A stretch of DNA of 64,000 nucleotides, from NCBI GenBank assembly GCA_964187785.1, contig OZ076417.1:20770001-20834000 (forward strand). Direction: 5' to 3'. Source of the stretch: Amphiscolops sp. MND2022. Its lineage: Eukaryota. Under the pieces are notes generated by a model. It ran no database searches. It was not told the DNA's origin and was given only the letters and a program-made list of their open reading frames with translations. This document shows, piece by piece, positions 5,921 to 49,987 of the stretch. The stretch's first letter is position 1. The number at the start of each line of letters is the position of its first letter. The translations under genes and the position numbers were made by a program.

Positions 5921-6044
5921 TCATAGCCTGCTTTTGATGCTCTCCGGCACGAACAATAAGTCTTTGAATTCTTGTGAAACTGTGCCTTCTCTGAAAATGA
6001 CTCGGAACAATTCAGTCACTATCTGGCTGTGGTCGGCGTATAAT
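5921..6044 (-). CDS. ANK-NUDT9 gene, alternative (distal) terminal exon 16b
   Basis: Acceptor gggacag|A TTA TAC; phase-2 start; (R)LYADHSQIVTELFRVIFREGTVSQEFKDLLFVPESIKSRL*. LYADHSQ matches the NUDT9 C-terminal LYASHSQ motif. Confidence 0.6.
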
Positions 6045-7125
6045 CTGTCCCGGAATGACCAATTACAATCAATTTTCCAAAAAACTACACTTAACATCAC
6101 TTTAGTTACAAAAAGTTACCAAAAATGTCCATTTTGGGAAAGGCTTCACAATAGATTTTTAAATCTAACAAAAGCTAAGCAATGCTTGATTGACTTTAGG
6201 CCTATTAAAAGGTAAAATGTTCAGCAAATGACGATGAAGAGGACTGCGAAAATGTAACCGTGAGGGTATTTCTTGGCGTAACTCGTTCTTTTGGAGATCC
6301 AATAGCGGGAAACTTTCTTCAATTTCATAAACTGACCAACTCAAGACAAGTATGATTCATTGAAACCACATTAACAGACGTATTTCAATCAATGGTGTGA
6401 TTCATAAGTCATTTTCATTATGAGTAATGCAATTTAAGATTTTTACCCCATCCCCTCTCGCACGCATAATTGAGATAACATTGAAAAATTGGCATAGGTA
6501 GGTAGCTGATTGTACGTAGTGACTTCATCAGAATAGAGTGAACTAGAGTTTCTTTAGGAATTATCAAAATGTTATATTATTATTCATTGAGAAAAAATTC
6601 AGTTCTTAAAGAAGTTGGAAGGAGGAGCCACGAATTTTTCCACAGGTAGAGCTATTTTCTCTGGAAAATCTGAACAAGCAAAACAGTTCAAGTATTTCAA
6701 TAACTGCCTTTCACACACATCCAATAAAAATAATTCACACAAAAATGTTTTCGATAAATTGATTTACAGTCTGAATTATAACAGCAGGATTTTATTTACC
6801 GAATACTTCATTAACAGCTTTATGGAAAGTTGGCAAACGACAACACGCATTCAAATATTCTTTTCCATCAAGTTTCAAGAAAAATATATAACATTAGTAG
6901 AATTGAGCCGAACATAACTACCGATATGGCCTGATTTTGAAAAGTCTGAAGAAAACTGAATCTATCTGTAAAAAAGCCATTTAATTTTTCGTCTCAAAAA
7001 ATTATTTCGTTCCACCAACAGAATTACCGGAAATTTCACCCTTTTAAAAAAACTCGACGTGGATTTTATTCGGCTCAATTGTACAATTCAAACTATTTGC
7101 TTGACAGTCCAAATTGCGAAGCCAT

Positions 7126-7246
7126 TCATAGCTTACTTTTGATGCTCTCCGGCACGAATAGATCTTTGAATTCTTGTGAAACTGCGCTTTCTCTGGAAAT
7201 GACTCGGAACAATTCAGTCACTATCTGGCTGTGGTCGGCGTATAAT
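7126..7246 (-). CDS. ANK-NUDT9 gene, proximal terminal exon 16a
   Basis: Acceptor gggacag|A TTA TAC; phase 2 fits the AG|GC donor at 9219; (R)LYADHSQIVTELFRVISRESAVSQEFKDLFVPESIKSKL*. Confidence 0.75.
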
Positions 7247-8267
7247 CTGTCCCGGAATGACCAATTACAATCAACCTTCGGAGAAACTACAGTTCATAAG
7301 CACATCACCGTGACTTAAAGGCTGCTAATCCCTAACTAAGGATCGCAAAATAGGATAATTGCGACGGATGGTATTGATCAGTTCATACTGGCTCTCGACA
7401 GGGACCAAAAAAAACCAGTTCAATAACTCGACGACCGATTAATCATTTGTGATAATATTGCTAACCACTTGCTAGGTATATTATTCAGCTATTTGCACAT
7501 CTATTGCATGAACAAAATACACTCATACACGTGCGCAATGCAGTTTATACAATAGTTTAAGGAGAGAACTGAACCTCTATTTGCAAGAAATGGAAAGAAT
7601 TGAACTTTAATTTGCAAGAAATAATTTTTTAGCTTTTAAATAAGCTGCATGTAAACTAAGCTAGCATTTAACAAGGTGATTCCTTTCATTCTTTTTTTTC
7701 TCATGCGTTTAAGGGACTGGAAAGACAAATTGAGTGTTTAATATAATGGTTACAATCGCCTTAATTAGCAGACTTCCTGATATTAACCGAAAACCGAGTC
7801 CCCAACCTTTGCTAGAAATGGATGTCTCGCGTATTAAGATAAATGAATAGAAATAATAGAAACTCCCTTATCAAAATTATATAATTATATTGATGTAAAA
7901 CTGTTGAATGTCTTCAGGAAAGGAAGAAGTGCCCCTGCCAAATGAACAAAAGTTACAAATTATCTGCCAAATGTTACTAATTGTCTAAAATGAAGTTTCA
8001 CATTGCAATTCAGTAGTAAATACATTCAAAGAAAAATGAAATAAGGAAATTTCTTCATTATTTGTAAACCTGCATTTCAAATGCCAACAAAATTGTAAAA
8101 CGTTTGTTTAGTCGATTTTCAAATAACCTGGATGATAGCAGAATTCAGAGCTGTTTTTGTTTTGGTCCATGTTTTTACAAATAAAGGTTGTTTATTTCTT
8201 ACCCTATTTTTCATACTACATACGGAACTGCTTAGTAATATTAGCTAGTTATTAATTGAATCATTGT

Positions 8268-8508
8268 TATTTTCCGACCCCTCATTTTAAAATGGGGGAG
8301 GAAAATCGTCATCTGTGTTGCGTTTTTTTCCAAATTCTGCCAAATTTGACTCACCACCTCAGGTGGTGAGTCAAGTAACTATAGTCAAGTAACTTGACTC
8401 ACCACCTCAGGTGGTGAGTTAAGTAACTATAGTATAACTATAACTATATGTCTAGTGGGACAGCAGAAAAGGGAGGAAAATATCCCGGTGCTTAGCGGGC
8501 GTCTTGTT
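8268..8508 (+). mobile_element. HINE-like element family D with internal palindromes
   Basis: 5' ttattttccgacc and 3' gggaggaaaata (imperfect inverted pair), then hairpin cccg-gtgcttag-cggg and cgtcttgtt; internal 29-nt palindrome at 8346-8374 repeated at 8394-8422. Confidence 0.5.
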
Positions 8509-9218
8509 TAAATTCATTGTTTCACCATTGATGTGGTGGTATTATTTGGAATTGAAATGAACACCGAATATTGAATGCATATAAGTGGTGTAAGTTAGTG
8601 AAATTCTGACATTCCACTTATTGCAAATTGTGGATCGCAATACTTGTGATAAGTGGAAATTTGAAAAAATGACGGAATCGTGGAAAAGTGCATTTTTGGA
8701 CCAACTTCCAGTTCTCACTTAATTACGCGCCTTGACTAGTTTACACTATTTTCCATTCCACTCATTGACACAGCTCCACCTTCCAGTAGACCATCTTGTC
8801 CGATTTACGATGAATGACAATTTTACGTATTACACAGATTACGCTGCGTGACTGAAATCTATTTTAACGGGATGTGTATCTTAATGCTTTAGTTCCAAAA
8901 AACTATTAAAAATTTGTACTTTTTTGGGTTCAAGTATGTTTTCCAAAAATGAACGGAAAATGGCATTTTTATTAAATTTCCAAAGAATTTCTAAATGTCA
9001 CTTTCGAGCTTCCATCCACATTTTGATTATTATGAAAAACTCGTTTTAGGTGCTATTGAAGTCTTAATGTCATTGATTTCTTTGATTGCTTCAACTGATG
9101 ACATAATAATCCGAACTTTTACTGTCAAAAATATTCATTTTTTGTTTCAAAATGAGCCGAAACTCCGTATTAGAGGCTCAGAATGTTTTCAAAGCGTATG
9201 TGTGTGCGTTGGTCATGC

Positions 9219-9391
9219 CTGTTGGCGTCGAAAGAGGCGTCTAGGGTGACCCAAGCGGCCCCCACGGCATCGTCGCCTGCCTGCAACTTGCGGCCCAGGT
9301 CTTCCTCGCTGTGGAAGTGGAACCAGAAGGCTTGTGTCTCCATCCACGCGTTGTCTGTGTTTCTAGGGTCGTTCACTACCATCGAGACTAT
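9219..9391 (-). CDS. NUDT9: ANK-NUDT9 gene exon 15 (NUDT9 domain)
   Basis: Acceptor atccag|ATA; IVSMVVNDPRNTDNAWMETQAFWFH...LQAGDDAVGAAWVTLD matches NUDT9 DDPRNTDNAWMET and AGDDA motifs. Donor is non-canonical AG|GCATGA (phase 2); otherwise reads through to a stop at 9170. Confidence 0.9.
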
Positions 9392-9460
9392 CTGGATAAG
9401 TAGAGACCACAACTACTACACAATTTAGATTGCGAATATAAAAGCATCATATAAAAGATC

Positions 9461-10397
9461 AAAAATATGCCCCTGCGGGGCACAGTATTATTTCTGCTTT
9501 AGGCTTTCATGTTCCATAATAGAAGCATATCTGGAATACCAATACACTCCTGTTTATTCATTATATAGCGCAAAATTAATCACTGTACAAGTTTATACTG
9601 CGTTTAAATCATATCGGACTAAAGCAAACATAACTACCAAGCGTATAGGAAGTTTCGCATTCGCATTTTGGAACTTTTTCCTTTCCCCCCCCCCCACACT
9701 TTTCAAGATGATGTTTTTGCAATTAATTATACCTCAATTGCGTTTCCAATGAAACAGTTCAGTTTTAAATTTATTCTCAAGGTGATAGTTTAGGATTCAG
9801 ATACAAACTTTGTTCACACTTTTTCCCTATGTAGTTACGCATTTTTGATGAAGAAATCAACAGCTTCCTGTTTTGAGTCATCAATAAACACTCAATACGA
9901 ACATAATTAGTCAAATTGTGTGAACAATGTTTTGTTCAAGCGGAAAACTACTCTAACAGTGTGGAGACAACAAAACAAAGGAAAAGATTTATTCGAAGAA
10001 ATATTGAATGATATAGTCAAATATAATCTTTTATGTTGAGTTTGTTTTCTTTAAAAAGTGTGGGGGGGGGAAGGAAAAAGAGCCCGCATTTTAATTCAGG
10101 CCAAGCTCTCGGCGAACGAATAATTAACACTCGTTCGTTTCATCTCAGTAACTCGGCGTACGAATAATTAACATTCGTTCGCTTCATCTCAATAACTCGG
10201 CGTACGAAAGCACAAATATCACTCGCTCGCTTCATCGCACGAGAATCGAATCATCGTCGGCAGCTTGAAATTTAAATCTCACGCTTACACTCACTGCCGA
10301 ACAAAATATCTGAATTTTTCAGTAGATACAAAAATTTTACTGAAAAAGTGACTTTCAGATTTCAATATTATTCCCGCGTTGCAGAAATAATAAAAAC
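9461..10397 (-). mobile_element. HINE-like element family B (other copies about 18815-19250, 36970-37500, 37822-38240, 38950-39660)
   Basis: Perfect 12-bp subterminal inverted repeat (tattatttctgc 9486-9497 / gcagaaataata 10381-10392), terminal hairpin gcccc-tgc-ggggc (9469-9481), internal roughly 40-bp tandem units (aactcggcgtacgaataattaacattcgttcgcttcatctcaat). Confidence 0.65.
9670..10084. mobile_element. MITE with GG-starting poly-C/G TIRs and 8-bp TSD, nested in family B
   Basis: TSD cgcatttt at 9662-9669 and 10085-10092; roughly 33-bp imperfect TIRs; empty site visible in the copy near 37185. Confidence 0.85.
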
Positions 10398-10690
10398 TGA
10401 TAACTTGGGCCTAAAAGCAGCACTAAAAACCGGAAACTTTTGCAAGTGAAGGACTAATTTTCAAAACAAAACACCGAATCGCAAAATGGATGCTCGTCTG
10501 TTAATACAGTATCGTGATCTTATTAATTTTTCCATTCAATTAATTTTTTCAACGCATGTATTGTTATTTAAATATTCAAATTTGACAAATAGAGGAGAGC
10601 TTACCCCTATTCTGCATTAGGGCTCAAAGAATAATATTCTTTATAATCAAAACTTTTAATTTTTCAAATCAAGAGTCGTTCGTGACTAAC

Positions 10691-10858
10691 GGGAGCGTCT
10701 ATTTTCTTGTGTTCCACGAAGCGCTTCACCATCTCGTCTCTGTGCTGCTTCCTCTCCTCTGGGGTGAGTTTGCTGTGGTCGTTGCCCTCTAGCGCCTCTT
10801 CGCAGAACTCTCGGATGGCTGTGCCCGACAACTCATTCTCGCCTGGGTCCACCATGCC
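10691..10858 (-). CDS. NUDT9: ANK-NUDT9 gene exon 14 (Nudix box)
   Basis: tgtcag|GGC ATG GTG...GCT CCC|GTTAGT; 168 nt, phase 0-0; GMVDPGENELSGTAIREFCEEAL. Confidence 0.92.
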
Positions 10859-11199
10859 CTGACACACACACACATGAAACATTTCTTGCTTCACTAGGGC
10901 TACCATTAGTGCAAGTTTTCTATGTTCTTGAAAATGAAATTTGAAGAATTTTTTCATAAATTGGTAGAAAACAATGCCTGCACATAATACCGGCGCGAAA
11001 GTTGCAAACTACATTTGTACTGCAACATTTGAAAAACTTTGGTTTTCTTTCTGAAAGAACGTTCCTACCATTGGCAATAAGATGAGATATTCAACATGAT
11101 GGCAACTATTCAAAGGCGGTCAGAAACGGAAACAAGATTTTCGTTACTCTTCAAATTTGTCATGCATTAGTGCATGGAATAAAAACTGTTTTCTTAATA

Positions 11200-11371
11200 C
11201 AGTGGAAATCGCTTAAATGGGACACGCGTATAAGAGACAACGCTTAATTGGCAAACATTTCGGTCCCGGCTGAAATAAAGCAGATAGCGCCCGCAACTGA
11301 TATAAGAGACAACGGATATAGTAGACAAGAATACCCAGTCCTGAGGCGTCCCATATAAGCGGCTTTCACTG
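11200..11371. mobile_element. Tc1/mariner (pogo-like) MITE
   Basis: TA-flanked; imperfect TIRs cagtggaaatcgcttaaatgggac / gtcccatataagcggctttcactg. Confidence 0.7.
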
Positions 11372-11426
11372 TATAGATTTTTCGAAAGATATATTTTTTC
11401 GAAAATACTTTATGTAGTTATCTTAC

Positions 11427-11502
11427 CCCCGGTAGTGCATACTGGCCAGTATCTGATCGCTTGATGAGGGCCAATTTTAGCACATTCTTCTCTGTTGACC
11501 AA
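11427..11502 (-). CDS. NUDT9: ANK-NUDT9 gene exon 13
   Basis: ttgcag|T TGG...CCG GGG|GTAAGA; 76 nt, phase 2-0; WSTEKNVLKLALIKRSDTGQYALPG, equivalent to the NUDT9 LQFVAI..RxDxxEWAIPG segment. Confidence 0.88.
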
Positions 11503-12400
11503 CTGCAACACAACAAACAACGCATCAAGAGGCACTTCAAAATTCCGTCTCGTTTAAAAGAACAACATTTACATATAAAACTCTTTGAGACCCGTATTAT
11601 CGAACAAAAGTCAAAAGGTAGAAAACCTTCAGATGATGCGAACTCCTCGATTGAAACTACGAGCAGAATAAAGATGTCTGTGTTGATTGGTTAATGTCTC
11701 ATTTCAACTCAGTACAAACTACATTTCAAACCGATATCAAACTGTGCTGTTTAAAGAAATTTTAAGCTGTTTTAAAAAAACTAGATTATTTAAACTCATT
11801 CGGTGATTTTTTGGTCAGATACTAGTTAACATAAAGCGTGTAGTTTTCAATTTCAGTTCAAACTCTGGTACTCCAGTTTTTTGTTCAAACGAAGGTCGAA
11901 ATTGTTTAACCGGTCAACCAGTGCGTGCTGCCTGAACCAGCGTGAACCATCGAAGTCGCGAAGAGACGCGCGCCCTGAACCATGTCAAGTACGCATAAAA
12001 AATCTGGTAATTTAGGAAACGAGTTTTAGTATTAGTCCTATTTCTGTGCGGTTTTCATTTTTTTAAAAAAATTAGTTCATTCATCTTTTAGAATAATAAA
12101 TATTGTACACTTTCAATATTATTCTGGGTTTTTGGTGCCCTTGTTAGTTCGCCACATATAAGTTAGTCCGTAAAACTTAGCCACATTTAAGTTAGCCACC
12201 ATATAAGTTCGCCATTAAAACATAAATTCAATTTCCATTGGCTGAAATGTGGGGAAGATGAACGTGGCGAACTTATTATATGGTGGCTAACATAAACGGA
12301 CACGGGGTTGGTTTTTAACTATTTCTGATAGTATTGAGCATAGTGTTTCCTCCCTCTCTCACTAATAGTGAACAAACTAGTGAATTATGTAGTGACAAAC

Positions 12401-12564
12401 CAGGTGACGATGGGGTCGGCGGCGTGATTGGGTCCGTACTTGCCCAGCAGACCCCTGCCTATCATGCCCGTGCGGCCGTTGGGGTTCAGGGGCACTCCTG
12501 TCACGGGGTGCAGCTGGTAGTCGCCCAGATACGACACCCTGTTGATCTCCACTGCTTTGTCCGG
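12401..12564 (-). CDS. NUDT9: ANK-NUDT9 gene exon 12
   Basis: ttgtag|CCG GAC...ACC TG|GTTTGT; 164 nt, phase 0-2; PLNPNGRTGMIGRGLLGKYGPNHAADPIVT matches NUDT9 NPxGRTGxxGRGLLGRWGPNHAADPI. Confidence 0.95.
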
Positions 12565-13144: not shown

Positions 13145-13250
13145 CCCGTGGTTGGGGTGATAGTTGTGAGAAGCCACTTTGTTGAACTGGAAATAATGTT
13201 CTCGGTCTTCTCTGAAACAGCATGAACGTAAAGCTGAACTTCGAGGTACG
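13145..13250 (-). CDS. NUDT9: ANK-NUDT9 gene exon 11
   Basis: catcag|C GTA...CAC GGG|GTTAGT; 106 nt, phase 2-0 bridges its neighbours; VPRSSALRSCCFREDREHYFQFNKVASHNYHPNHG contains the FN expected in NUDT9. Confidence 0.75.
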
Positions 13251-13597
13251 CTGATGCTATTAGATAGGTGTTGTTACAGTACGAAAAAGGAATACAAAAG
13301 GATGTTTTCAAGACAGGCTGATGTTTTCAGACGCTTAGACCGCTGATTTCAAAATCGCTATTTCGCTGAAAAAGGTTTTCAACTTTTTTTGCGAGAATTT
13401 TTCATACTGTGTGGGTTTTACAAAGGTAAGGTTGGAATTTCCGTGTATACTAAGAGGAATTTTTGAATTTGGAGAATCTATTAGTTGCAGCTAATTTGAA
13501 TCGTTGAAAAAAATTCTGCGCGGGCGCTAAATCGCTAATTAGCGGTGTCAAAACTGTTTTTGAAAAGACATCAAAGTGGCAAAAGGGGTAAAATATT

Positions 13598-13905
13598 ACA
13601 AGAAGCCCGCTAAGCACTGGGGTATTTTCCGCCTTGTTCTTCTTATTCTGTTTTTCTCCGCCAATTGCATTGTTTTCTGCATTATACCACCACATACCAC
13701 TGAGGTAGGTATGAAGGACTTGATGACTCATTTTCTCATTTGCCTCATGAAATATCTAATGATGATTTAACCCGATCTGCATCCACTACTTGACTATTTT
13801 AGTTACTTGACTATTTATGGAGATCGTGGAGATTTGAAAGGATTTAGAAAAACGCAACACAGATTATGATTTTCCTCCCTCATTATATGTGGGCGGAAAA
13901 TGAAA
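13598..13905 (-). mobile_element. HINE-like element family D
   Basis: acaagaagcccgctaagcactgggg end with tattttccgcc; inverted partner gggcggaaaa at 13891-13900. Confidence 0.5.
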
Positions 13906-13941
13906 AATATATAAACGTTCAACAAAAAGAGAGGAGCTAAC

Positions 13942-14123
13942 GCAGTCATGCCGTATATTTCGGGGTCTGCCCAAATGGGTGGGTAGTAGCACATGTTCTT
14001 CTCGTAGCCCCCGTCCTGTTCCACTCGATCAGCCAACTTCTTTGCGTTCTGCTCACCTTCTCTGCTCATCGTGTACAGCTCCAGGGCACTGAACATTATG
14101 GGTGCATAGCCTTCTAAAGGAAC
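13942..14123 (-). CDS. NUDT9: ANK-NUDT9 gene exon 10
   Basis: ctgcag|GTT CCT...ACT GC|GTTAGC; 182 nt, phase 0-2; ends YYPPIWADPEI (NUDT9 WADP motif). Confidence 0.85.
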
Positions 14124-14937: not shown

Positions 14938-15107
14938 ATTCCAGGGTCGTTTATCGTGGGGCACGGGAAACCGGGCAAGGTATTTGCTGTTTTTTAGCAA
15001 GACAGGCACCTCGCAAGCAGGGCCAGTAGATTGAGATGCTCCTTTCGTTGATTCCTTTTTCTTCTTCGAATCCTTTCTCCCAGCCGTGGGCGAGTCTGTC
15101 ACCATAC
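14938..15107 (-). CDS. NUDT9: ANK-NUDT9 gene exon 9 (start of NUDT9 domain)
   Basis: ttacag|GT ATG GTG...TGG AAT|GTAAGT; 170 nt, phase 1-0; RFPVPHDKRPW resembles the NUDT9 N-terminal RxxVPxxKxxW segment. Confidence 0.88.
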
Positions 15108-18100: not shown

Positions 18101-18217
18101 GTCTGTTGAAAGTCTTACATGCCCCAGACGTCTGTCTAAAAAGTTCTCATGGTCTGCAAAACTACCAATTACCAAGAGCTAGAACGTGCAAAACAAGTTG
18201 ACTGAAGTTACAATTTA

Positions 18218-27296: not shown

Positions 27297-27342
27297 CCAA
27301 TCTCTGCTTGATCGTCTTCATTTCGTCTTGGAGGTTAACAAT
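27297..27342 (-). CDS. ANK-NUDT9 gene exon 8 (coiled-coil bridge)
   Basis: Strong polypyrimidine acceptor cttcag|ATT and donor TTG G|GTAAGT; 46 nt, phase 0-1, exactly what links exon 7 to exon 9; IVNLQDEMKTIKQRL continues the heptad begun in exon 7. Confidence 0.8.
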
Positions 27343-30043: not shown

Positions 30044-33000
30044 TATGTTTCCTTTGGGGGACCCTTTGGAGTAGAGTTTGCATTGGGCGGACTTGGCCAG
30101 GTGCTCTGCGCAGAATTGTAAAAAGTGGACCGATCAGTGTGAGGATTGTAGTCTGAAGAAAAAAAAAAGGTCACTGCTATAGTCGGGCATTTTTCCTTAA
30201 AAGGAAAACGCGCCGACTAAAAAATGCGAAAAAAAGTCTCACAAAGCCGAAATAATCTGCACAAAAAATTTTGGTCAATGGCGGGACTCGAACCCACGTC
30301 CTTCTGCTTAGCAGATCTCAAAAAAGCCTAATTAACCTCTATACCAAGTGCCTGTAGGAGTAGTGTGGCGATCATTGTTAGTGCAAGTCCGCTTCTAAAA
30401 TAAAGCTTATTAAATCTGTCACTTCGTTGGTCTTAAAAAAAAAGAAACAAGCTGGGAACGGCCGAAGTCGACGCCATATCTAAGGCTCAAAAATAGCAAA
30501 AGGACTTCAAAGTGTCAAGTATTCTCTTCTACAGTACCCGCATGAGGAAAAAATTGAAAAAAGCCCATTTTTTTCGAAGTTTTTTTTCAATTTTTTTGGT
30601 CTCCGATAAGTCGCATAGTGCCGAAAATTGTAGAGGGGACCTCAAAAAAGCCTAATTATCCTCTATCTCAAGTGCCAGTAGAAGTAGTGTTGCATTTAGT
30701 GTTAGTTCAAGTCAGCTTATAAAGCTTATAAAATCTGTCACTTCGTTGGTCTTAAAAAAGAAAAGTCACTACTATAGTCTGCGTTTTTCTACGAAAAACG
30801 CTGACTAAAAATAAAACCCCTTATTAATATGAATGTTTGGATCACTCCTTTTGTCTGCTAATATCTCAAACTATTGATTATAAGGAGAAATATCTTTGAT
30901 TAAAGTTTCTTAAAAACGTTGCCGGCAAAAACTTTTCAGCTACTTAGCAAAAGGCTTGCGACATCTTCGGGTAGTACAAGTAGTACAAACCATGCTCTGG
31001 GTTTCTTTTACAGACAGAGGAAAAGCATTGCGAAAAACTGTCGAAGAAAGTTAGTTTCCACATTATCGCGGGGTGGACGCTGAACAAGCAATTCTGCTTT
31101 CTGAGTCGGCGCACTTTCGGATACTTTTTTTCGGAGAAAATTCGTCTTTGACAAGCCAGTTGATTTTTCCATTTTGGATCTTTTTCACATAGGTAATCTT
31201 CTTGATGCCCAGTCAAGTTAGAAAAGTTTGAAAAAGATTGAATATCAAAAGTTGCAACTTCATAATTTTAGGTTCTCATTTCAAGTTTTGTGTAAAAGCT
31301 AAATGCATTTATCACTTCTGATGTCACGAGTTTGTGCGCGTTTGCATTTGGATATGTTCTTCTAAGAATTCAGCCACAAATATGGGCTTTTCAACGTTTT
31401 GCAATACTTCTGTAACAAATACCAAAATTAAAAACCAGTTTCATTGTACGGTTTCCTGGGCCCAACATTCAGTAAAAACAATCAGAACCTGGTACTCATT
31501 AGAAGCAACAACCTAACACCTGAAATTGATTCATAAATCGGAAAACTTCTGAAACATTATACACAATTCTCAATACCAATTTCTTTTTTATTGCCAAGAA
31601 TTTCCATTTTATTTCAGAGGATGCAAAGTTTGCATCTATGTGAACGGAAACAATCAAGAATGAGGGTACTACTATACTCACAATTTGCAAGGAGCTCGAT
31701 GAGATAAAACGGAATTTCAGTCTTTAACCAGTCCAAATTGGCATACAAAGGGTGTTGGTAACAGTTAGACCCCACGATATCGTAAACACAGTAAAAGAGC
31801 ACACAAGAAAGAGTAGAAGTCTGAAGTTGAAACTCAGTGGATTTTAAAAGAGCAATTGTTTCACCGGCAGACAAACAAAACTTCTTTGCATTGAGAATGT
31901 TCTTGGTTCCCAGTTGAATGGTCGGCTGTCTGTCTTAACTCTTTCTCTTTGACGTAGTGCTTGGTACTATTAACTCTTACTGCAGCGTTTAATGGTGGTA
32001 GTAGAATTCAGTGTTTGTTATCTGTTAGCATGCTCTTATAACCACCAATTTATAACCATGCCAATGGCCAACTATTACAAACTTTACAATACTAGTATAA
32101 GCACCAAGGCTGAGGAAGGCAGGCAACCGCTTATTCAAACGAGGCCCAAGACTTCGTTATATCTCGGGTTAGTCCGCCAGAAACTATGTGAAAAGTTGCA
32201 ACCAATGGTTCTGTTTACTCAAAACTACCTTTCGTGTTCAGCGTTCAGTCTGTAACATCGTTTTGCAAGTTCTTCGAAAATAGCTCGGAAATGGGCCACG
32301 GCTTGGGGGTTACATTTTGTACATAGCTGAATAATAATCTAAGGCATAGCTCTTCTGGGGGACCCTATGTTTCCTTTGGGGGACCCTTTGGAGTAGAGTT
32401 TGCATTGGGCGGACTTGGCCAGGTGCTCTGCGCAGAATTGTAAAAAGTGGACCGATCAGTGTGAGGATTGTAGTCTGAAGAAAAAAAAGGTCACTGCTAT
32501 AGTCGGGCATTTTTCCTTAAAAGGAAAACGCGCCGACTAAAAAATGCGAAAAAAAGTCTCACAAAGCCGAAATAATCTGCACAAAAAATTTTGGTCAAGG
32601 GCGGGACTCGAACCCACGTCCTTCTGCTTAGCAGATCCCAAAAAAGCCTAATTAACCTCTATACCAAGTGCCTGTAGGAGTAGTGTGGCGATCATTGTTA
32701 GTGCAAGTCCGCTTCTAAAATAAAGCTTATTAAATCTGTCACTTCGTTGGTCTTAAAAAAAAAGAAACAAGCTGGGAACGGCCGAAGTCGGCGCCATATC
32801 TAAGGCTCAAAAATAGCAAAAGGACTTCAAAGTGTCAAGTATTCTCTTCTACAGTACCCGCATGAGGAAAAAATTGAAAAAAGCCCATTTTTTTCGAAGT
32901 TTTTTTTCAATTTTTTTTGGTCTCCGATAAGTTGCATAGTGCCGAAAATTGTAGAGGGGACCTCAAAAAAGCCTAATTATCCTCTATCTCAAGTGCCAGT

Positions 33001-34676
33001 AGAAGTAGTGTTGCATTTAGTGTTAGTTCAAGTCAGCTTATAAAGCTTATAAAATCTGTCACTTCGTTGGTCTTAAAAAAGAAAAGTCACTACTATAGTC
33101 TGCGTTTTTCTACGAAAAACGCTGACTAAAAATAAAACCCCTTATTAATATGAATGTTTGGATCACTCCTTTTGTCTGCTAATATCTCAAACTATTGATT
33201 ATAAGGAGAAATATCTTTGATTAAAGTTTCTTAAAAACGTTGCCGGCAAAAACTTTTCAGCTACTTAGCAAAAGGCTTGCGACATCTTCGGGTAGTACAA
33301 GTAGTACAAACCATGCTCTGGGTTTCTTTTACAGACAGAGGAAAAGCATTGCGAAAAACTGTCGAAGAAAGTTAGTTTCCACATTATCGCGGGGTGGACG
33401 CTGAACAAGCAATTCTGCTTTCTGAGTCGGCGCACTTTCGGATACTTTTTTTCGGAGAAAATTCGTCTTTGACAAGCCAGTTGATTTTTCCATTTTGGAT
33501 CTTTTTCACATAGGTAATCTTCTTGATGCCCAGTCAAGTTAGAAAAGTTTGAAAAAGATTGAATATCAAAAGTTGCAACTTCATAATTTTAGGTTCTCAT
33601 TTCAAGTTTTGTGTAAAAGCTAAATGCATTTATCACTTCTGATGTCACGAGTTTGTGCGCGTTTGCATTTGGATATGTTCTTCTAAGAATTCAGCCACAA
33701 ATATGGGCTTTTCAACGTTTTGCAATACTTCTGTAACAAATACCAAAATTAAAAACCAGTTTCATTGTACGGTTTCCTGGGCCCAACATTCAGTAAAAAC
33801 AATCAGAACCTGGTACTCATTAGAAGCAACAACCTAACACCTGAAATTGATTCATAAATCGGAAAACTTCTGAAACATTATACACAATTCTCAATACCAA
33901 TTTCTTTTTTATTGCCAAGAATTTCCATTTTATTTCAGAGGATGCAAAGTTTGCATCTATGTGAACGGAAACAATCAAGAATGAGGGTACTACTATACTC
34001 ACAATTTGCAAGGAGCTCGATGAGATAAAACGGAATTTCAGTCTTTAACCAGTCCAAATTGGCATACAAAGGGTGTTGGTAACAGTTAGACCCCACGATA
34101 TCGTAAACACAGTAAAAGAGCACACAAGAAAGAGTAGAAGTCTGAAGTTGAAACTCAGTGGATTTTAAAAGAGCAATTGTTTCACCGGCAGACAAACAAA
34201 ACTTCTTTGCATTGAGAATGTTCTTGGTTCCCAGTTGAATGGTCGGCTGTCTGTCTTAACTCTTTCTCTTTGACGTAGTGCTTGGTACTATTAACTCTTA
34301 CTGCAGCGTTTAATGGTGGTAGTAGAATTCAGTGTTTGTTATCTGCTAGCATGCTCTTATAACCACCAATTTATAACCATGCCAATGGCCAACTATTACA
34401 AACTTTACAATACTAGTATAAGCACCAAGGCTGAGGAAGGCAGGCAACCGCTTATTCAAACGAGGCACAAGACTTCGTTATATCTCGGGTTAGTCCGCCA
34501 GAAACTATGTGAAAAGTTGCAACCAATGGTTCTGTTTACTCAAAACTACCTTTCGTGTTCAGCGTTCAGTCTGTAACATCGTTTTGCAAGTTCTTCGAAA
34601 ATAGCTCGGAAATGGGCCACGGCTTGGGGGTTACATTTTGTACATAGCTGAATAATAATCTAAGGCATAGCTCTTC
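30044..34676. repeat. Recent 2.3-kb tandem duplication (30044-32355 and 32366-34676)
   Basis: ORF-track entries recur at offset 2321; at least 6 substitutions and 2 homopolymer indels seen between copies; 10-nt junction insert tgggggaccc at 32356-32365. Confidence 0.95.
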
Positions 34677-35344: not shown

Positions 35345-35574
35345 CTCGGTTGCCATTTCCTTTATGACCTCTTCGTCAACCCCTGTAGTGCTCTTGCCGG
35401 CAGTAGTAGCCGCAGCATCGTCATTGGCCGCCCATCTGTCGCTGTCACCAAGTAGTCCATATTTGGTACTCTTTCTCTCTCCGCTGAACTTGAGATTGCC
35501 AGAATCGTCTAGATTTTTGGTCCGGCTGCTGTACTTCTCGTGGTATGATGGCGGCGTGTATCTTTTGTTGTCAT
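35345..35574 (-). CDS. ANK-NUDT9 gene exon 7 (linker, start of coiled coil)
   Basis: tttcag|AT GAC...ACC GAG|GTCAGT; 230 nt, phase 1-0; DNKRYTPPSY...VDEEVIKEMATE. Confidence 0.8.
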
Positions 35575-38476: not shown

Positions 38477-38695
38477 CCGAACATTTCAAGAACTGCTCTA
38501 TGATAGGACTGGCCGAGAAAGAGGTTAGTGAAGAAATAACAGGAACGTCTTCAGCATTGTGACCGGAGGAAGTCTTTTCGTCTTGGGCTGCTTGCGATTT
38601 CGTGACGTCATTAGCGGAAGCAAGAGAAGCCCGAGAAACAGGATTGAGAAGCGAAGAGTAGAGTGGAGAAGATTCACGCAGGTTAGTTTCAAAAA
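38477..38695 (-). CDS. ANK-NUDT9 gene exon 6 (Ser-rich linker)
   Basis: ttgcag|TT TTT GAA...TCG G|GTAAAG; 219 nt, phase 1-1, open only in this frame. Confidence 0.75.
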
Positions 38696-41291: not shown

Positions 41292-41328
41292 CAATGTCAT
41301 CAAGGCCGGAATACTTCGCTTTCTCACG
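41292..41328 (-). CDS. ANK-NUDT9 gene exon 5
   Basis: tttcag|CGT GAG...ATT G|GTAAGG; 37 nt, phase 0-1 bridges exon 4 and exon 6; REKAKYSGLDDI. Confidence 0.75.
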
Positions 41329-43369: not shown

Positions 43370-43570
43370 CTCCTCAAGCCAAGCATCCCTGGAACTGTGG
43401 CTGTGACGTAACGAGTAGTCCAGGTCAGCGGAGGAAGTAAAAGTAGAGGGGCCGTTCTTCTTAGTCCCCCCACTGCTTAGAATGGGGGGTCTGGCTAAGG
43501 CCTCGAGGAGAACTTCAAGCACGACTGTATTTCTTTCTAGACGGGCTATGTCCATACAGGTTCTTCCGTC
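43370..43570 (-). CDS. ANK-NUDT9 gene exon 4 (last ankyrin repeat plus linker)
   Basis: ttccag|GAC GGA...GAG GAG|GTTAGT; 201 nt, phase 0-0; DGRTCMDIARLERNTVVLEVLL. Confidence 0.85.
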
Positions 43571-44425: not shown

Positions 44426-44535
44426 TTATAGTGAGCATACAGTTGATAGCAAACACAGAATCGCCGACGACGGCGGAAACACAGTTGGTTGGGAACAAAC
44501 AAACAAACAAAAGTAGCAGGCAGTTGTACTCACGA

Positions 44536-46375
44536 CAGGGCCCGGATTTATATGAGAAGTTCATAACGCATGTTTTTACGCATATTTGGCCTAAATTTAT
44601 TTTTGCGCATATTTTCATGAACTTAACGCATATTTAGCCAAAATTGACAAGGAATTGGACTGCAGTGACAATTTACTTTCAGGAATGTGTATGTGAGTGT
44701 GACAGATTTCAGTGAGCAAACATTGCGGTTATGTGGTGCCTGTCTGTCTGGCACTGCTTTATTCGTTCTCAGTGTTTACAGTATTGTATTGCCATTTGAT
44801 CTTGCTTACTGTGCATTTGTCCAAGATGCCAAAACACAAATTGCACGGTTCTGACTATGTGAAGACATTGCCTGGTGGTATGCAAAACTGGAATTACGAG
44901 CAATCGAGTAACAAAATTGTTTGCAAGTTATGTGTTAATGGCTTCGATTATTCAGCTTCGAACATTAATTTTCGAGTACACCAGCATATAGATAGCGACA
45001 GGCATAAAAGGCAGTTATCATTAAATGCAAAGAGACAGGATGCGCTTAAGTTTTCGGATGAAACTTCTAACAAATTCTTTGATCATATTACTGAAGCATT
45101 TACCTCAGCAGCTATTCCATTTCACAAACTTCAATGTCGAAAAGTAAAATCCCTGTTGGAGACATGGTCGGGCCAGGCAGCTCCAGACGAGTCTACACTT
45201 CGAAAGAATTATTTGCCGAAACAGTTCAATAAAGTTATATCAGCAATTAAAGAGGCGGTTACTGGGAAAAATTACTACATTATGGTAGACGAAGCGACAG
45301 ACCCCGCAGGTAGATTTTTGGTTGGTGTTTTAATTGGAGTTTTAGACAACGAATTAAAGCCACCAATGCTTTTTAATCTTGCTGAGACTGAGAAAACGGA
45401 TGCTGTAGCCATAAACCAAATAGTTAATTCGAGTCTTTGCTCGATTTTTGACGAGATGGACTATTCAAAATTTCGTTTATTTGTATCAGATGGTGCCAGT
45501 TACATGCTTAAAGCAGGCAAGCTGTTAAAAGGCTTATTCCCGAAACTGCTACACATTACCTGTCTAGCCCACGGTTTAAATCGGCTTGCAGAAAATGTTC
45601 GATCCACAAATTCTGCTACTGATTTTTTCATATCGAAGGTGGCAAAATTATTCTGCAATTGTAGTCGCAGACAACGATTATTCCGAGAATTGACAGGGTT
45701 GCCCTTACCGCCTGTGCCTGTTATCACCAGATGGTCTTCGTGGCTAATTGCAGTGTTTTATTACGCCAAGTATTTTGCCGAATTTCAACAATTTCTGATT
45801 CACTTGGGAAGTGAAGAACCCAATAATTCAGAAATCACGAAAATTTTGGACCTCATGGACAACGCGCTCATGCAAGAAATGGCATTTTTAGTTGCATCTT
45901 TCGATTTTTTACCAGAGGCCATTACGAAGTTACAGGGACGACTGTCGTTGTGTGATCAGTTTGTTATTTTGGAGAAAGTTATTGTCAACGTACAAGGCGA
46001 CAACTATAAAGAGAAACTCGATGCTGTTTTAACCCGAAATCCTGATTTTAAAATTTTGCAAGATTTTGCAAAAATTCTGAGAGGAGAGAGAGTCAGTTCG
46101 GATGTGCCACCACTAGATGCTCCAATTTACCGATATGCACCCCTGGTTTCTGCCGATATAGAGAGAGTTTTCTCAGAAATGGGACAAATTCAAACTCCAC
46201 AAAGAATGTCACTTACCATTGAAAACTTGAAACACCATTTATGTGTCTATTGGTATAATACTGTGTATGAAAACCAATAAATTTTTACGCATATTTTTAC
46301 GCATATTTTAGGATTTTTTACGCATGTTTTTACGCATATTTGGCATATTTTTTACGCATGAAAATCCGGGCCCTG
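44536..46375 (+). mobile_element. Intact 1840-bp autonomous-type hAT transposon (element 1)
   Basis: Perfect 14-bp TIR cagggcccggattt; perfect 8-bp TSD actcacga (44528-44535, 46376-46383); subterminal acgcat(a/g)ttt arrays at both ends. Confidence 0.95.
44826..46280 (+). CDS. hAT transposase, 484 aa, CGGBP-like N-terminal zinc finger
   Basis: CKLC...HIDSDRH zinc finger; catalytic DEATD, SDGASYM, SADIERVFS; CLAH and RW motifs; uninterrupted ORF. Confidence 0.92.
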   Translation: MPKHKLHGSDYVKTLPGGMQNWNYEQSSNKIVCKLCVNGFDYSASNINFRVHQHIDSDRHKRQLSLNAKRQDALKFSDETSNKFFDHITEAFTSAAIPFHKLQCRKVKSLLETWSGQAAPDESTLRKNYLPKQFNKVISAIKEAVTGKNYYIMVDEATDPAGRFLVGVLIGVLDNELKPPMLFNLAETEKTDAVAINQIVNSSLCSIFDEMDYSKFRLFVSDGASYMLKAGKLLKGLFPKLLHITCLAHGLNRLAENVRSTNSATDFFISKVAKLFCNCSRRQRLFRELTGLPLPPVPVITRWSSWLIAVFYYAKYFAEFQQFLIHLGSEEPNNSEITKILDLMDNALMQEMAFLVASFDFLPEAITKLQGRLSLCDQFVILEKVIVNVQGDNYKEKLDAVLTRNPDFKILQDFAKILRGERVSSDVPPLDAPIYRYAPLVSADIERVFSEMGQIQTPQRMSLTIENLKHHLCVYWYNTVYENQ

Positions 46376-46381
46376 ACTCAC

Positions 46382-46483
46382 GAAGTCTCTGATCATGGGA
46401 TCGGCGCCCCCCTTGAGCAGCATGTCTATGATGAGGAGGTTGCCCATCGCCACTGCATCGTGCAAGGCCGTGCGCCCGTCGTC
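46382..46483 (-). CDS. ANK-NUDT9 gene exon 3 (ankyrin repeat)
   Basis: ttccag|GAC GAC...GAC TTC|GTGAGT; 102 nt; DDGRTALHDAVAMGNLLIIDMLLKGGADPMIRD is a canonical ankyrin repeat. Confidence 0.95.
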
Positions 46484-47216: not shown

Positions 47217-47351
47217 CAGACTGATTCTATTGGTGTCGACTGAGCCCAGTTCCAGCAGAAACTGCAGCACCCTGTACTGGGAGAACTTGGCGGCTACTCT
47301 GACGGGGGGCCATCCACTGATCGAGTGCTTACCCCCTCGCACGTACACTGC
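47217..47351 (-). CDS. ANK-NUDT9 gene exon 2 (ankyrin repeat)
   Basis: ttctag|GCA GTG...AGT CTG|GTGAGT; 135 nt; GWPPVRVAAKFSQYRVLQFLLELGSVDTN. Confidence 0.88.
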
Positions 47352-48891
47352 CTAGAAGACAAAATTTGCAAAGTGACGGAAACAAAAGTGGAAACACTGA
47401 GCTTGGAACTTGAATGTGCGTGCAGTAGTGAAATTATTAAAAGCAACATAAGGCAAATTTTTTTAATAAAAAGTGATTTTTAACTTAGTGATACAGTTTA
47501 CAATATTTTCGGGAAAAAATATTTGTCAGATTTGAAAAGTGTTCGGGACTGTCATAATTATTTCGAAATCAAGTTAAAGTGGGTCAAAAATTCAAAAAAC
47601 TAAAAATGTTTTCTAAATTGTTCTCGACTAATGAAATGAGTGCGTGAGACCTTATTCAGCCTATGAGATGTGTTTATTTGCTCTTTTTCCGCGTGCAATT
47701 TGTTTTTAGTATAAGCTAAATTAAATTGTATAATAAATGATTTTTCAATGCACCCTAAAGTTTTTCAAGGTAAAGAAAGCACTGTCTTTCATAGTAATTG
47801 TTCGTACGAACAACTAGCTTGATCTTCACTCAGGGTTCGGAAAAAACAAGATACTGAAAAAATCGTGTTTAAAACGTTTAAAACATTAAAATTTTTTGTT
47901 TAAAACATGTTCAAAACTCTAGATCTATCAGAAATACTTTTAACACTAAACAACCTAAAAACTGAGTTTACTCCAGGAAGCGAAAACAGAAAACAAGTTT
48001 GCTGTCGATTTCGTGTTTTGTTGTGGACGAAACCCAGGGTGCTGAAAGCCCAGGGTGTGGACAAAGCTTGGGGAACTTGGAATAAGAACCGGAAGCGCAT
48101 CGGCAATTTTCGTGGTCTTCCGCCAAATTGCACAAGATTACTTGAGTTTTTTTTAGCGATTTTAGGAACTTGAAAATACCTATAACCAAAATAAAAACAA
48201 TTGAACAAAATGAAGGTTTTTGTCGTGTTTAAAACTGTTTAAAACATGTTTAAAACGCGTTTAAAACACGGCATGTTTTAAACATGCGAACCCTGTCTTC
48301 ACTTGCACTTAGCGCAGCAGCTACCTACCACTTTTCGGATTATCGCTACCGCTAGTTACACCTCATATTCAAAAAAATTCCCCATATTTCGCTTTACTTT
48401 TGTTGGATAAAAATTCAGCTTTTCTGAATACCAATAGGTGAACAAAACGCTTCCGCCTGTTTTTCATGAGTTCAGGAACAGCATGAGAGTTTCTTGAATT
48501 TTCGAGCTGCGAACGCTTTTATTCCTTTCACACCATCTGGTTTCACCAACTTCTCAGTTGCCAAATTGAAATGAAAACATGAAAATTTTGTGATTTTACT
48601 GCGGCGATAGCTGAGTTTCGCTTGGCGGTCAAACCACTGGTACAAACAACAAACGCGCATTCTTCAAAATTTGTTACATAGCAGCTTTCGTTGAAGATTT
48701 TGGGATCGGAGAATTGTCCCGAAACCAATCCCCTAAACATGAGCAAAAAACGGATAATGGGGTGGGTAGACATTTTAAATCCACCTTTCATGGTTCTGAT
48801 GCAAAAGTCAAGCATCAAAAAACACCGCATTTTGATCTTCAAATTAAACCCAAATATCCAATAACCTCACAAATGACCTCAAAGGAAAAAA

Positions 48892-49847
48892 AACAAGACG
48901 CCCGCGGACCAGCGGGATATTTTCCGCCCCAAATCTCTTCGAAAAAGACTACTGAACAACAAATTTGTTCCTTGTTGACTCTTTTCAACATTCCAATCTA
49001 CGAAGTCTGTCGAAAATTTGACAAAAATTGCATAAAAAACTTTGAAAATTGGAAAGTTTTGGGTTTTTTGTCATTTTCGGTTTCAATTTGATATATTTTT
49101 CATTTAGAAAACAGTCATTATCTCTTCGGAAAAGCATACTGGACAACGAATTCCTGCCATTCCTGTCACGTTAAGCGTTTTCAACATTCTAATCCACGAA
49201 GTCTATCGAAAATTTGACAAAAATTGCATAAAAACGTTAAAAATCGAAAAATTTTGGAATTTTTAATCATTTTTTTGGTAATTTTTCTTTTAAAAAACCG
49301 CATTTATCTCTTCAGAATACTATTGGACAACGAATTCGTGCCTTGTTGAACGTTTTCAACATTCTAATCCACGATGTTTATCGAAAAAATGACAAAAATT
49401 GCATTAAAACGTTAAAAGTCGAAAAAATTTGGAATTTTTGTCATTTTTTTGGTAATTTTTCTTTTAAAAAACCGCATTTATCTCTTCAGAATACTATTGG
49501 ACAACGAATTCGTGCCTTGTTGAACGTTTTCAACATTCTAATTGACGATGTTTATAGAAAAAATGGCAAAAAATGCATGAAAACGGTGAAAATTGGGAAA
49601 GTTTTGAATTTTTGTCATTTTCGGGGTCATTTTTGGGTCATTATGGGGTCATTTCCGTCATTCCCAAAAAAGTCCAAAAATCTTTACAAATACATATCGC
49701 ATGGAACTAAATTTATGTCAGTTGAATTCTGTGAATGTACTTCTTCATATTACGTAAACAATAATTCTTGGCAAATTTTGTAAAAAAAAACCCGTTTGAT
49801 TTAAATATTTTCCTTTCCCATATGAAATATGGGCGGAAAATAATAAA
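48892..49847 (-). mobile_element. HINE-like element family D with about 173-185-bp internal tandem repeats
   Basis: Perfect 12-bp inverted pair tattttccgccc (48918-48929) / gggcggaaaata (49831-49842); hairpin cccgc-ggacca-gcggg; units start ggacaacgaattc at 49141, 49326, 49499. Confidence 0.65.
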
Positions 49848-49853
49848 ACAAAC

Positions 49854-49987
49854 CTGACAAAGTGCGTCAACAGGTGCACCTCTGGACACGAGAATCTTGA
49901 CTAGGGTCAGGTCGCCATCCGCAGTGGCCCTGCACACATCTGACACGGAGGGAAAGGTCATGTCGCCACAGGTCAAAAGGTCAAGCA
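49854..49987 (-). CDS. ANK-NUDT9 gene first recognisable coding exon (ankyrin repeat)
   Basis: tattag|TG CTT...TGT CAG|GTTTGT; 134 nt; in-frame ATG at 49961; VCRATADGDLTLVKILVSRGAPVD. True 5' end unresolved. Confidence 0.85.

What the first reader, a model, noticed from the sequence alone, without database searches (positions are those of the whole stretch)
5921..49987. Hidden 16-exon gene fusing ankyrin repeats, a coiled coil and a NUDT9 ADP-ribose hydrolase
Seen: exons 49854-49987, 47217-47351, 46382-46483, 43370-43570, 41292-41328, 38477-38695, 35345-35574, 27297-27342, 14938-15107, 13942-14123, 13145-13250, 12401-12564, 11427-11502, 10691-10858, 9219-9391 and 7126-7246 join with matching phases and no stop (about 745 aa from ATG 49961). 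The ANK half and the NUDT9 half are 20 kb apart. They are linked by a 46-nt exon whose splice yields an unbroken heptad, VIKEMATE|IVNLQDEMKTIKQRL (hydrophobic residues at 3-4-3-4-3-4 spacing). Established: NUDT9 domains are known as stand-alone enzymes or as TRPM2 tails behind a coiled coil. I know of no characterised soluble ANK-coiled-coil-NUDT9 protein, but could not search. Inference: an oligomeric, ankyrin-targeted ADP-ribose eraser or sensor, an eraser-side analogue of tankyrase's ANK-SAM-PARP layout. No transmembrane exons were seen.
Basis: partly seen in the sequence, partly recalled or inferred. Interest (0 to 1): 0.85.

Follow-up and report, generated by a model that had tools for sequence, protein, structure and literature searches.

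The report
Acoel ankyrin–coiled-coil–NUDT9 fusion gene
The 16 exons do form one gene joining ankyrin repeats and a short coiled coil to an ADP-ribose-splitting NUDT9 enzyme domain; the layout is shared by other acoel flatworms, is already auto-annotated in one of them as "uncharacterized protein", and has never been studied.

Summary
All 16 minus-strand exons have AG acceptors, and all donors are GT except a GC donor on exon 15. They join into one open frame. Exons 2-3 are ankyrin repeats. Exons 9-16 are a NUDT9-type Nudix domain with a canonical REFCEE box.

The 46-nt bridging exon is real. It is conserved in length, phase and isolation inside long introns in Convolutriloba macropyga, and its peptide lies equally isolated in Symsagittifera roscoffensis. 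A 2,597-nt transcript contig encodes an intact 727-aa ortholog that aligns end to end with the model. RefSeq lists the same architecture in C. macropyga as LOC142352232, isoforms X1-X3.

Two corrections are needed. The exon 11 acceptor is probably 13211, not 13250, which gives 732 aa. The exon 15/16 junction is uncertain.

No RNA data exist for this genome; all five runs found are DNA (four were laid). Orthologs also have shorter isoforms from internal first exons that lack the ankyrin part.

The architecture was found only in acoels. Elsewhere NUDT9 is fused to coiled coils, PH, SLOG or peptidase domains. The origin of the domain (NUDT9 or TRPM2) could not be resolved, because the acoel branch is very long.

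The most likely function is a soluble, probably oligomeric ADP-ribose pyrophosphatase targeted by its ankyrin repeats. The tankyrase analogy is untested. This is a new variant of a known kind, of moderate interest.

The parts
49854..49987 (-). Exon 1. The coding sequence starts at ATG 49961. It encodes the N-terminus and the first ankyrin helices.
   Evidence: tblastn gives 65-77% identity to the three acoel orthologs searched.
47217..47351 (-). Exon 2, ankyrin repeat.
   Evidence: Pfam Ank_4/Ank weak match. 75-77% identity to orthologs.
46382..46483 (-). Exon 3, canonical ankyrin repeat.
   Evidence: Pfam Ank E=3.6e-9. 74-76% identity to orthologs.
43370..43570 (-). Exon 4, the last ankyrin repeat followed by the start of a poorly conserved linker.
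   Evidence: 61% identity over the ankyrin part.
41292..41328 (-). Exon 5, a 37-nt exon. Its end, together with the start of exon 6, encodes the conserved LDDIVFETNLRES motif.
   Evidence: Alignment.
38477..38695 (-). Exon 6, linker. The FETNLRES motif is conserved; the rest has diverged.
35345..35574 (-). Exon 7, a low-complexity linker. Its last ~10 codons begin the heptad helix.
27297..27342 (-). Exon 8, the 46-nt microexon. It holds the core of the coiled-coil heptads and bridges the two halves of the gene.
   Evidence: Strong splice sites. A 46-nt exon in the same phase sits in the C. macropyga locus (L002 45106-45151), and the homologous peptide lies in S. roscoffensis (L003 23905-23955). 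tblastn hit.
14938..15107 (-). Exon 9. It begins with an in-frame Met, then a basic linker, then the start of the NUDT9 N-terminal domain.
13942..14123 (-). Exon 10, NUDT9 N-terminal domain with an acoel-specific insert of about 29 aa.
13145..13211 (-). Exon 11, revised.
12401..12564 (-). Exon 12, the most conserved NUDT9 segment (GRTG..GRGLLG..GPNHAADP).
   Evidence: 6co7 at 4.4e-15, 1q33 at 1.6e-12.
11427..11502 (-). Exon 13, a Nudix core strand.
10691..10858 (-). Exon 14, the Nudix motif. REFCEE is preceded by a one-residue insertion (GX5EX8 instead of X7).
9219..9391 (-). Exon 15, Nudix core (DPRNTDNAWMET). The donor is uncertain: GC at 9218, or GT at 9250.
7126..7246 (-). Exon 16, the C-terminal helix and the stop codon. 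The alternative acceptor gives a start at 7275.
5921..6092 (-). Second tandem copy of the last-exon segment, a possible alternative terminal exon. Spacing is 1,202 nt and identity 92%.

Best explanation
The window holds the ortholog of an acoel-specific multi-isoform gene. The species is a third acoel, not named to me.

The longest product is about 732-745 aa and has four parts:
- about four ankyrin repeats (aa ~8-143);
- a ~190-aa largely disordered linker with one conserved motif (LDDIVFETNLRES);
- a ~25-residue heptad helix, split between exon 7 and a 46-nt microexon;
- a complete two-domain NUDT9-type Nudix hydrolase.

Shown:
- the exon structure;
- domain identities;
- conservation of the fused reading frame, of the microexon, and of exon order in three acoel genomes plus one assembled transcript;
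- a canonical REFCEE Nudix box.

Inferred:
- The NUDT9 part is an active Mg2+-dependent ADP-ribose pyrophosphatase (ADPR to AMP plus ribose-5-phosphate).
- The long isoform has no N-terminal leader, so it would be cytosolic or nuclear rather than mitochondrial.
- The heptad helix makes the protein a dimer or higher oligomer.
- The ankyrin repeats dock it on a partner protein, so that free ADPR (or possibly poly-ADPR ends) is removed locally.
- Shorter isoforms from internal first exons, seen in the orthologs, would supply untargeted enzyme.
For: Gene model.

Domains:
- In the window.
- In orthologs: Pfam Ank_2 at 7e-16 and 1.1e-14, plus NUDIX. Precomputed NUDT9_N (PF25969) hits appear.
- The AlphaFold model of ortholog P0285 best matches human NUDT9 (1qvj, E=2.5e-16, TM 0.55 by target), then the TRPM2 chanzyme.

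The fusion is real:
- P0285 (727 aa) lies uninterrupted on a 2,597-nt contig (L001 63-2246). It aligns with the model over aa 2-745 at 50% identity.
- C. macropyga isoform X3 (734 aa) does the same.
- The 46-nt exon, in the same phase and between long introns, is present in C. macropyga, and its peptide lies equally isolated in S. roscoffensis. Intact ankyrin exons lie 3-7 kb upstream on the same strand in S. roscoffensis.

Constraint:
- The ankyrin part is 73-77% identical between species, more than the NUDT9 part at 56%.
- Four of six exon SNPs between individuals are synonymous.

Catalysis: REFCEE is present in all four acoel sequences. REUXEE is the box needed for ADPRase activity, and RILGEE or REFGKK mutants are inactive (PMC6461439).

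Heptads. The segment is predicted as a helix at residues 334-357 of P0285.
Against: - No RNA from this species. The five runs found (four laid) are genomic DNA, so the 7>8>9 and 15>16 joins are inferred from orthologs only.
- Orthologs have isoforms without ankyrin repeats (C. macropyga X4; S. roscoffensis X1-X3; short contigs P0282, P0284 and P0006). The relative abundance of the long form is unknown.
- The Nudix motif carries an acoel-only one-residue insertion, and the N-domain carries a ~29-aa insert, on a very long branch. Activity or substrate may therefore have changed.
- The heptad stretch is short (3.5 heptads). The AlphaFold model is poor outside the Nudix core (mean pLDDT 57; ankyrin part below 50).
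- The linker of this species differs strongly from its relatives, so exons 6-7 are the least secure.
Confidence: 0.6

Rival explanations
1. In practice these are two transcription units. The NUDT9 exons are expressed mainly from internal promoters as a stand-alone enzyme that starts at the Met of exon 9 or in exon 8. The ankyrin-containing mRNA is a rare read-through form of little functional weight.
For: - Exon 9 opens with an in-frame ATG, and exon 8 also holds one.
- Orthologs have several ankyrin-less isoforms from alternative first exons. The S. roscoffensis annotation has no ankyrin isoform at all.
- Transcript P0006 starts in the sequence just upstream of the exon 9 equivalent.
- There is no RNA for this genome.
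Against: - A complete 727-aa fused ORF sits on one assembled transcript, and RefSeq has isoforms X1-X3.
- The ankyrin exons stay intact, collinear and 73-90% identical across three genomes.
- The microexon keeps its length and phase, which is pointless if it were only 5' UTR.
- Read-through of exon 7 into its intron stops after 14 codons without any conserved tail.
Confidence: 0.15
2. The NUDT9 part no longer hydrolyses ADP-ribose. It serves as a nucleotide-binding sensor module, as in vertebrate TRPM2, that regulates whatever the ankyrin repeats bind.
For: - One-residue insertion inside the Nudix motif, seen in none of the other sampled sequences that show the motif.
- A ~29-aa insert in the N-domain.
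- Branch length of 1.8-2.8 changes per site.
Against: - The REFCEE box and all other near-invariant family residues are kept in four species.
- Vertebrate TRPM2 lost activity through REF>RIL and EE>QE changes, which are absent here (PMC6461439).
Confidence: 0.2
3. The NUDT9 exons are the 3' end of a TRPM2-like channel gene, or a decayed remnant of one.
For: - The best PDB match of exon 12 is Nematostella TRPM2.
- NCBI names S. roscoffensis isoform X1 'TRPM-like 2'.
- An AU test does not reject a clade of the acoel sequences with TRPM2 (p=0.45).
Against: - No SLOG, TRPM2 or ion-transport domain in any ortholog.
- No coding-like ORFs in the 20 kb between exons 7 and 9.
- No hydrophobic segment in the model.
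- The apparent similarity of the helix to TRPM2 is not significant.
Confidence: 0.02

Closest known systems
Convolutriloba macropyga LOC142352232 (XP_075260804/806; 'uncharacterized protein', isoforms X1-X4), and the 727-aa metatranscriptome ORF P0285
   Same: Same order of ankyrin repeats, linker with the FETNLRES motif, heptad helix on a 46-nt exon, and NUDT9 domain with the X8 Nudix insertion. About 50% identity end to end and 73-77% in the ankyrin part.
   Different: The linker exons differ; C. macropyga has an extra cassette exon. Its last exon is unsplit, whereas here it is split and its 3' piece is duplicated. It is an automatic annotation only, with no study.
Human NUDT9 (PDB 1Q33/1QVJ), a mitochondrial ADP-ribose pyrophosphatase
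   Same: Two-domain NUDT9 fold and REFxEE box. It is the best structural match of the ortholog model.
   Different: NUDT9 is a ~350-aa stand-alone enzyme with a mitochondrial leader. Here there is no leader on the long form, about 390 extra N-terminal residues (ankyrin, linker, helix), a one-residue Nudix-motif insertion, and a ~29-aa N-domain insert.
TRPM2 NUDT9-H domain of invertebrate channel-enzymes (Nematostella 6CO7; choanoflagellate 8SR7)
   Same: A NUDT9-type domain with a canonical Nudix box placed behind a coiled-coil helix. Sequence similarity is equal to or better than that to NUDT9.
   Different: No SLOG/MHR, TRP or pore domains, so the protein is soluble. Homology of the helices is not demonstrable, and the tree position is unresolved.
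Cnidarian coiled-coil-NUDT9 proteins (Hydractinia XP_057295406, named 'UACA-like'; P0050)
   Same: Soluble proteins with a long coiled-coil N-terminal region fused to NUDT9.
   Different: Pfam finds no ankyrin repeats in the Hydractinia protein (P0269) or in P0050. Their coiled coils are hundreds of residues long. Their NUDT9 domains form a separate, well-supported clade (96/94).
   Same: Ankyrin repeats plus an oligomerising element plus an ADP-ribose-handling catalytic domain, in the same order.
   Different: No SAM domain, no PARP domain, and no evidence for ARC-type peptide binding. The resemblance is only in layout and was not tested.

Membership tests
NUDT9 family (ADP-ribose pyrophosphatase, Nudix superfamily) | Nudix box REUXEE within GX5EX7REUXEEXGU | tested here: inconclusive
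   REFCEE is intact in the window and in three orthologs. The spacer before it is 8 residues, not 7, a feature seen only in the acoel sequences. The functional meaning of the box is taken from PMC6461439.
NUDT9 family (ADP-ribose pyrophosphatase, Nudix superfamily) | NUDT9-specific N-terminal domain preceding the Nudix core | tested here: met
   Precomputed PF25969 NUDT9_N hits on orthologs. Exon 12 aligns to 1q33 residues 73-118. The ortholog model matches 1qvj over 347 columns.
NUDT9 family (ADP-ribose pyrophosphatase, Nudix superfamily) | Mg2+-dependent hydrolysis of ADP-ribose to AMP and ribose-5-phosphate | not testable with these tools
   Needs an enzyme assay.
Ankyrin-repeat proteins | Tandem 33-residue ANK repeats recognised by profile | tested here: met
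   Window exon 3 gives Ank E=3.6e-9. Orthologs give Ank_2 at 7e-16 and 1.1e-14. The best PDB hits are ankyrins and DARPins over residues 47-142.
TRPM2 channel | SLOG/MHR N-terminal domains and a six-helix pore domain upstream of NUDT9-H | tested here: not met
   No LSDAT, TRPM2 or Ion_trans hits in orthologs, whereas true TRPM2 controls (P0125, P0117) show them. No hydrophobic segment in the model. No such ORFs in the introns.
Coiled-coil oligomer | Several uninterrupted heptads with hydrophobic a/d positions, and oligomerisation | tested here: inconclusive
   3.5 heptads, with 29 of 32 a/d positions hydrophobic in four species. The segment is predicted helical with pLDDT about 60. The oligomeric state was not testable.

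The most novel reading that the evidence does not exclude
Acoels have built a targeted, oligomeric ADP-ribose-degrading enzyme. Ankyrin repeats would dock a NUDT9 hydrolase on specific partner proteins, to extinguish local ADPR or poly-ADPR signals or to sense them. This would be a soluble counterpart of the coiled-coil-NUDT9H tail of TRPM2. It may be the only NUDT9 gene of these animals, with alternative promoters choosing between targeted and free enzyme.
Probability: 0.2. Interest if true: 0.6.

Novelty: new variant of a known kind. Interest (0 to 1): 0.42.

Why it matters
NUDT9 domains are known as a free mitochondrial enzyme and as the ligand-handling tail of TRPM2 channels. A conserved soluble form tethered to ankyrin repeats through a short coiled coil would be a third way of deploying the domain.

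It suggests spatially targeted removal of ADP-ribose, a second messenger and PARP/PARG product, in a lineage used for regeneration and symbiosis research. The ankyrin part is more conserved than the enzyme part, which points to a specific and still unknown binding partner.

On the practical side, the result corrects gene models. The S. roscoffensis annotation misses the ankyrin exons. It also shows that a 46-nt microexon buried in 8-17 kb introns is the linchpin of the reading frame.

Tried and rejected
- **RNA evidence in this genome.** Both run searches returned only runs of one organism. Laying four of them showed flat, intron-covering contigs, which means genomic DNA, and no splice joints.
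- **Own-genome annotation.** No protein flagged as the window's own appeared in three database searches.
- **Hydrophobic leader.** The leader of P0006 and the ORF extension upstream of exon 8 (MLRISFILLLLLLQ...) were considered as a conserved signal peptide. This was rejected: both are translations of polypyrimidine or acceptor-side intron sequence, and the peptide is not conserved.
- **Alternative 'MDNY...' first exon.** tblastn did not find this ortholog exon in the window.
- **Phylogenetic origin.** Two trees placed the acoel clade differently, once with protist and bacterial sequences and once with an insect NUDT9. The AU test could not exclude TRPM2 affinity, so no origin is claimed.
- **Homology of the helix with the TRPM2 coiled coil.** The alignment is not meaningful.
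- **AlphaFold model of the ortholog.** It is too poor outside the Nudix core to count ankyrin repeats or see domain contacts.
- **Specific relatives of the N-terminal half outside acoels.** Only generic ankyrin hits were found.
- **Full-length searches with the window's own protein.** The spliced protein of the window has no reference form, so no full-length database, Pfam or structure search was run with it. Exon-wise references and orthologs were used instead.

Full report

Every one of the 16 minus-strand exons is preceded by AG. Each is followed by GT, except exon 15, whose donor is GC. The joined sequence reads open for 745 codons from ATG 49961 to a stop in exon 16.

Profile and structure-database searches were run exon by exon, because a spliced protein has no reference form.
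- Exon 3 contains an ankyrin repeat (Pfam Ank, 3.6e-9), and exon 2 has a weaker one.
- Exon 14 contains a Nudix motif.
- Exons 12 and 15 give strong matches to human NUDT9 (1q33) and to the NUDT9-H domains of the Nematostella and choanoflagellate TRPM2 channel-enzymes.
- The 20 kb between exons 7 and 9 holds no coding-like ORF other than repeats.
- The model has no transmembrane-like segment.

**2. Is it one gene?**

This was the critical point, because the two halves are joined only through a 46-nt exon. Exon 9 also begins with an in-frame Met.

A search of 1.8 billion representative proteins with exon 12 returned a 393-aa stand-alone relative, P0006. Searching with that protein uncovered Convolutriloba macropyga LOC142352232, an 'uncharacterized protein' carrying Pfam ankyrin, NUDT9_N and NUDIX domains. 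It also uncovered Symsagittifera roscoffensis 'ADP-ribose pyrophosphatase, mitochondrial-like'. The window therefore comes from an acoel.

Cluster members include C. macropyga isoform X3 (734 aa) and P0285, a 727-aa ORF. P0285 lies uninterrupted on a 2,597-nt JGI contig, so it is a spliced mRNA (L001 63-2246). Both align with the window's model from residue 2 to the last residue at about 50% identity. The ankyrin part is 73-77% identical and the NUDT9 part 56%.

The microexon is conserved.
- In the C. macropyga genome it is again 46 nt, in the same phase. It has the boundaries cttcag|ATT...TTGA|gttagt and sits between introns of 7 and 17.5 kb.
- In S. roscoffensis the microexon peptide lies 4.4 and 12.3 kb from its neighbours.
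- In S. roscoffensis, intact ankyrin exons (90% identical to C. macropyga) lie 3-7 kb upstream on the same strand, although the annotated isoforms do not include them.

So the fused reading frame, the exon order and the microexon are conserved in three genomes and in one assembled transcript. I could not test splicing in this species itself. The only runs holding the sequence are genomic DNA, with flat depth, contigs running through introns, and no exon-exon joints.

**3. Corrections to the model**

- **Exon 11.** All orthologs lack 13 residues at its start. A much better acceptor (tgctgtttcag|A) lies 39 nt downstream at 13211 and keeps the frame. The likely product is therefore 732 aa.
- **Exons 15/16.** The last coding exon is unsplit in both other acoels. 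Here it is interrupted after the DASFDAN codons, and its 3' piece occurs twice, with 1,202-nt spacing and 92% identity. A GT-AG alternative (exon 15 ending at 9251, exon 16 starting at 7275) is also open and one residue shorter.
- **Exons 6-7.** They encode a linker that has diverged strongly from the relatives apart from the LDDIVFETNLRES motif. They are the least secure exons.

**4. Isoforms**

The orthologous loci are multi-promoter genes.
- C. macropyga X4 and S. roscoffensis X1 start at an alternative first exon (MDNY...) that splices into the exon 6 equivalent.
- S. roscoffensis X3 uses yet another first exon, joined to the exon 9 equivalent.
- Several short transcript contigs start at or just upstream of the exon 9 Met.

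I did not find the MDNY exon in the window.

**5. What the parts look like**

- **Ankyrin part.** It is a generic four-repeat stack. The best PDB matches are ankyrins and DARPins, and there is no specific relative outside acoels.
- **Heptad helix.** It spans about 25 residues. In the best register, 29 of 32 a/d positions are hydrophobic across four species, with seven fully hydrophobic columns at 3-4-3-4 spacing. AlphaFold predicts a helix there with modest confidence.
- **NUDT9 part.** It keeps REFCEE and the family's near-invariant residues. REUXEE is the catalytic box. RILGEE and REFGKK mutants and human TRPM2 (RILRQE) are inactive, whereas invertebrate NUDT9-H domains with canonical boxes are active (PMC6461439).
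- **Acoel-only features.** There is one extra residue between the GX5E glutamate and the box, and a ~29-aa insert in the N-terminal domain.
- **Structure.** The ortholog model's best structural match is human NUDT9 (1qvj, E=2.5e-16), followed by TRPM2 chanzymes.

**6. Origin**

Trees of the domain put the four acoel sequences on a branch of 1.8-2.8 changes per site, and its attachment moves with taxon sampling. An AU test does not reject a clade with TRPM2 NUDT9-H (p=0.45). I make no claim on whether the domain derives from NUDT9 or from a TRPM2 tail.

The same searches show that NUDT9 domains are fused to many partners elsewhere:
- long coiled coils in cnidarians (Hydractinia 'UACA-like', P0050);
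- PH domains;
- SLOG domains;
- a prolyl-oligopeptidase domain.

The ankyrin combination was seen only in acoels.

**7. Mechanism and comparison**

My best reading, at 0.6 overall, has three elements:
- The gene encodes a soluble ADP-ribose pyrophosphatase.
- Its long isoform is oligomerised by the short coiled coil.
- The ankyrin repeats position it on a partner protein.

One gene with a fused isoform I put at about 0.9. An active enzyme I put at about 0.65.

A review lists NUDT9 among phosphodiesterases able to process poly-ADP-ribose partially (PMC6414514).

No paper linking NUDT9 with acoels or describing ankyrin-NUDT9 proteins was found.

**Verdict**

The finding is correct and well read. 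It is a lineage-restricted new domain architecture of a known enzyme family. It is already present in automatic annotation but unstudied, and is of moderate interest.

Noticed in passing
window 5921-9391 (-): The terminal coding exon is one piece in C. macropyga and S. roscoffensis. Here it is split by a ~2-kb intron with a GC donor, and its 3' piece is tandemly duplicated (5955-6092 and 7157-7294, 92% identity). The sequence just upstream of each copy still encodes a relic of the exon 15 tail (VDCNWSFRDR against VTLDASFDANR). This looks like a recent, lineage-specific intron created by duplication or insertion.
   Followed up: partly
L003 2676-6650 (S. roscoffensis OY783238.1): Intact ankyrin exons homologous to exons 1-4 lie upstream of the annotated NUDT9-like gene on the same strand. 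They are in no listed gene model, so the public annotation probably misses the long isoform. Exons 1 and 2 are fused there (intron 1 absent).
   Followed up: partly
window 30944-34576: A ~2.3-kb tandem duplication inside intron 7. Identical ORF sets repeat at 30944-32255 and 33265-34576.
   Followed up: no
window 9419-10418, 11219-11418, 12019-12218, 13219-14018: Intron segments with word depth of 10^4-10^5 in all four DNA runs, against about 10-100 elsewhere. These are very high-copy repeats, with many internal joints.
   Followed up: no
window 44712-46280 (+) and 61510-63276 (+): Long ORFs with DUF659, and in the second also the hAT C-terminal dimerisation domain. These are hAT-type transposase genes. 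The first sits in intron 3 of the gene, on the opposite strand.
   Followed up: partly
window 632-1108 (-): A 158-aa ORF with a DUF1759 match (1.4e-8), probably part of a retroelement downstream of the gene.
   Followed up: no
P0007, P0013, P0021; P0023, P0036; P0266: Other NUDT9 fusions turned up among the exon 12 hits. SLOG (TRPM N-terminal) domains occur without a pore: NUDIX was confirmed by Pfam for P0007 only, while P0013 and P0021 have just the exon 12 match. PH-NUDT9 and NUDT9-prolyl-oligopeptidase fusions were also seen. The domain is a frequent fusion partner outside animals' canonical NUDT9.
   Followed up: no
P0275 (S. roscoffensis isoform X3), residues 1-85: The alternative first exon spliced to the exon 9 equivalent has a W-x-C...C...H-x-H pattern. 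From memory this is reminiscent of a FLYWCH-type zinc finger, possibly an exonised transposon fragment. Not tested.
   Followed up: no
window 9313, 12513 (exons 15, 12): Two nonsynonymous (H675Y, L530V) and four synonymous differences between the window and other sequenced individuals of the same organism.
   Followed up: partly
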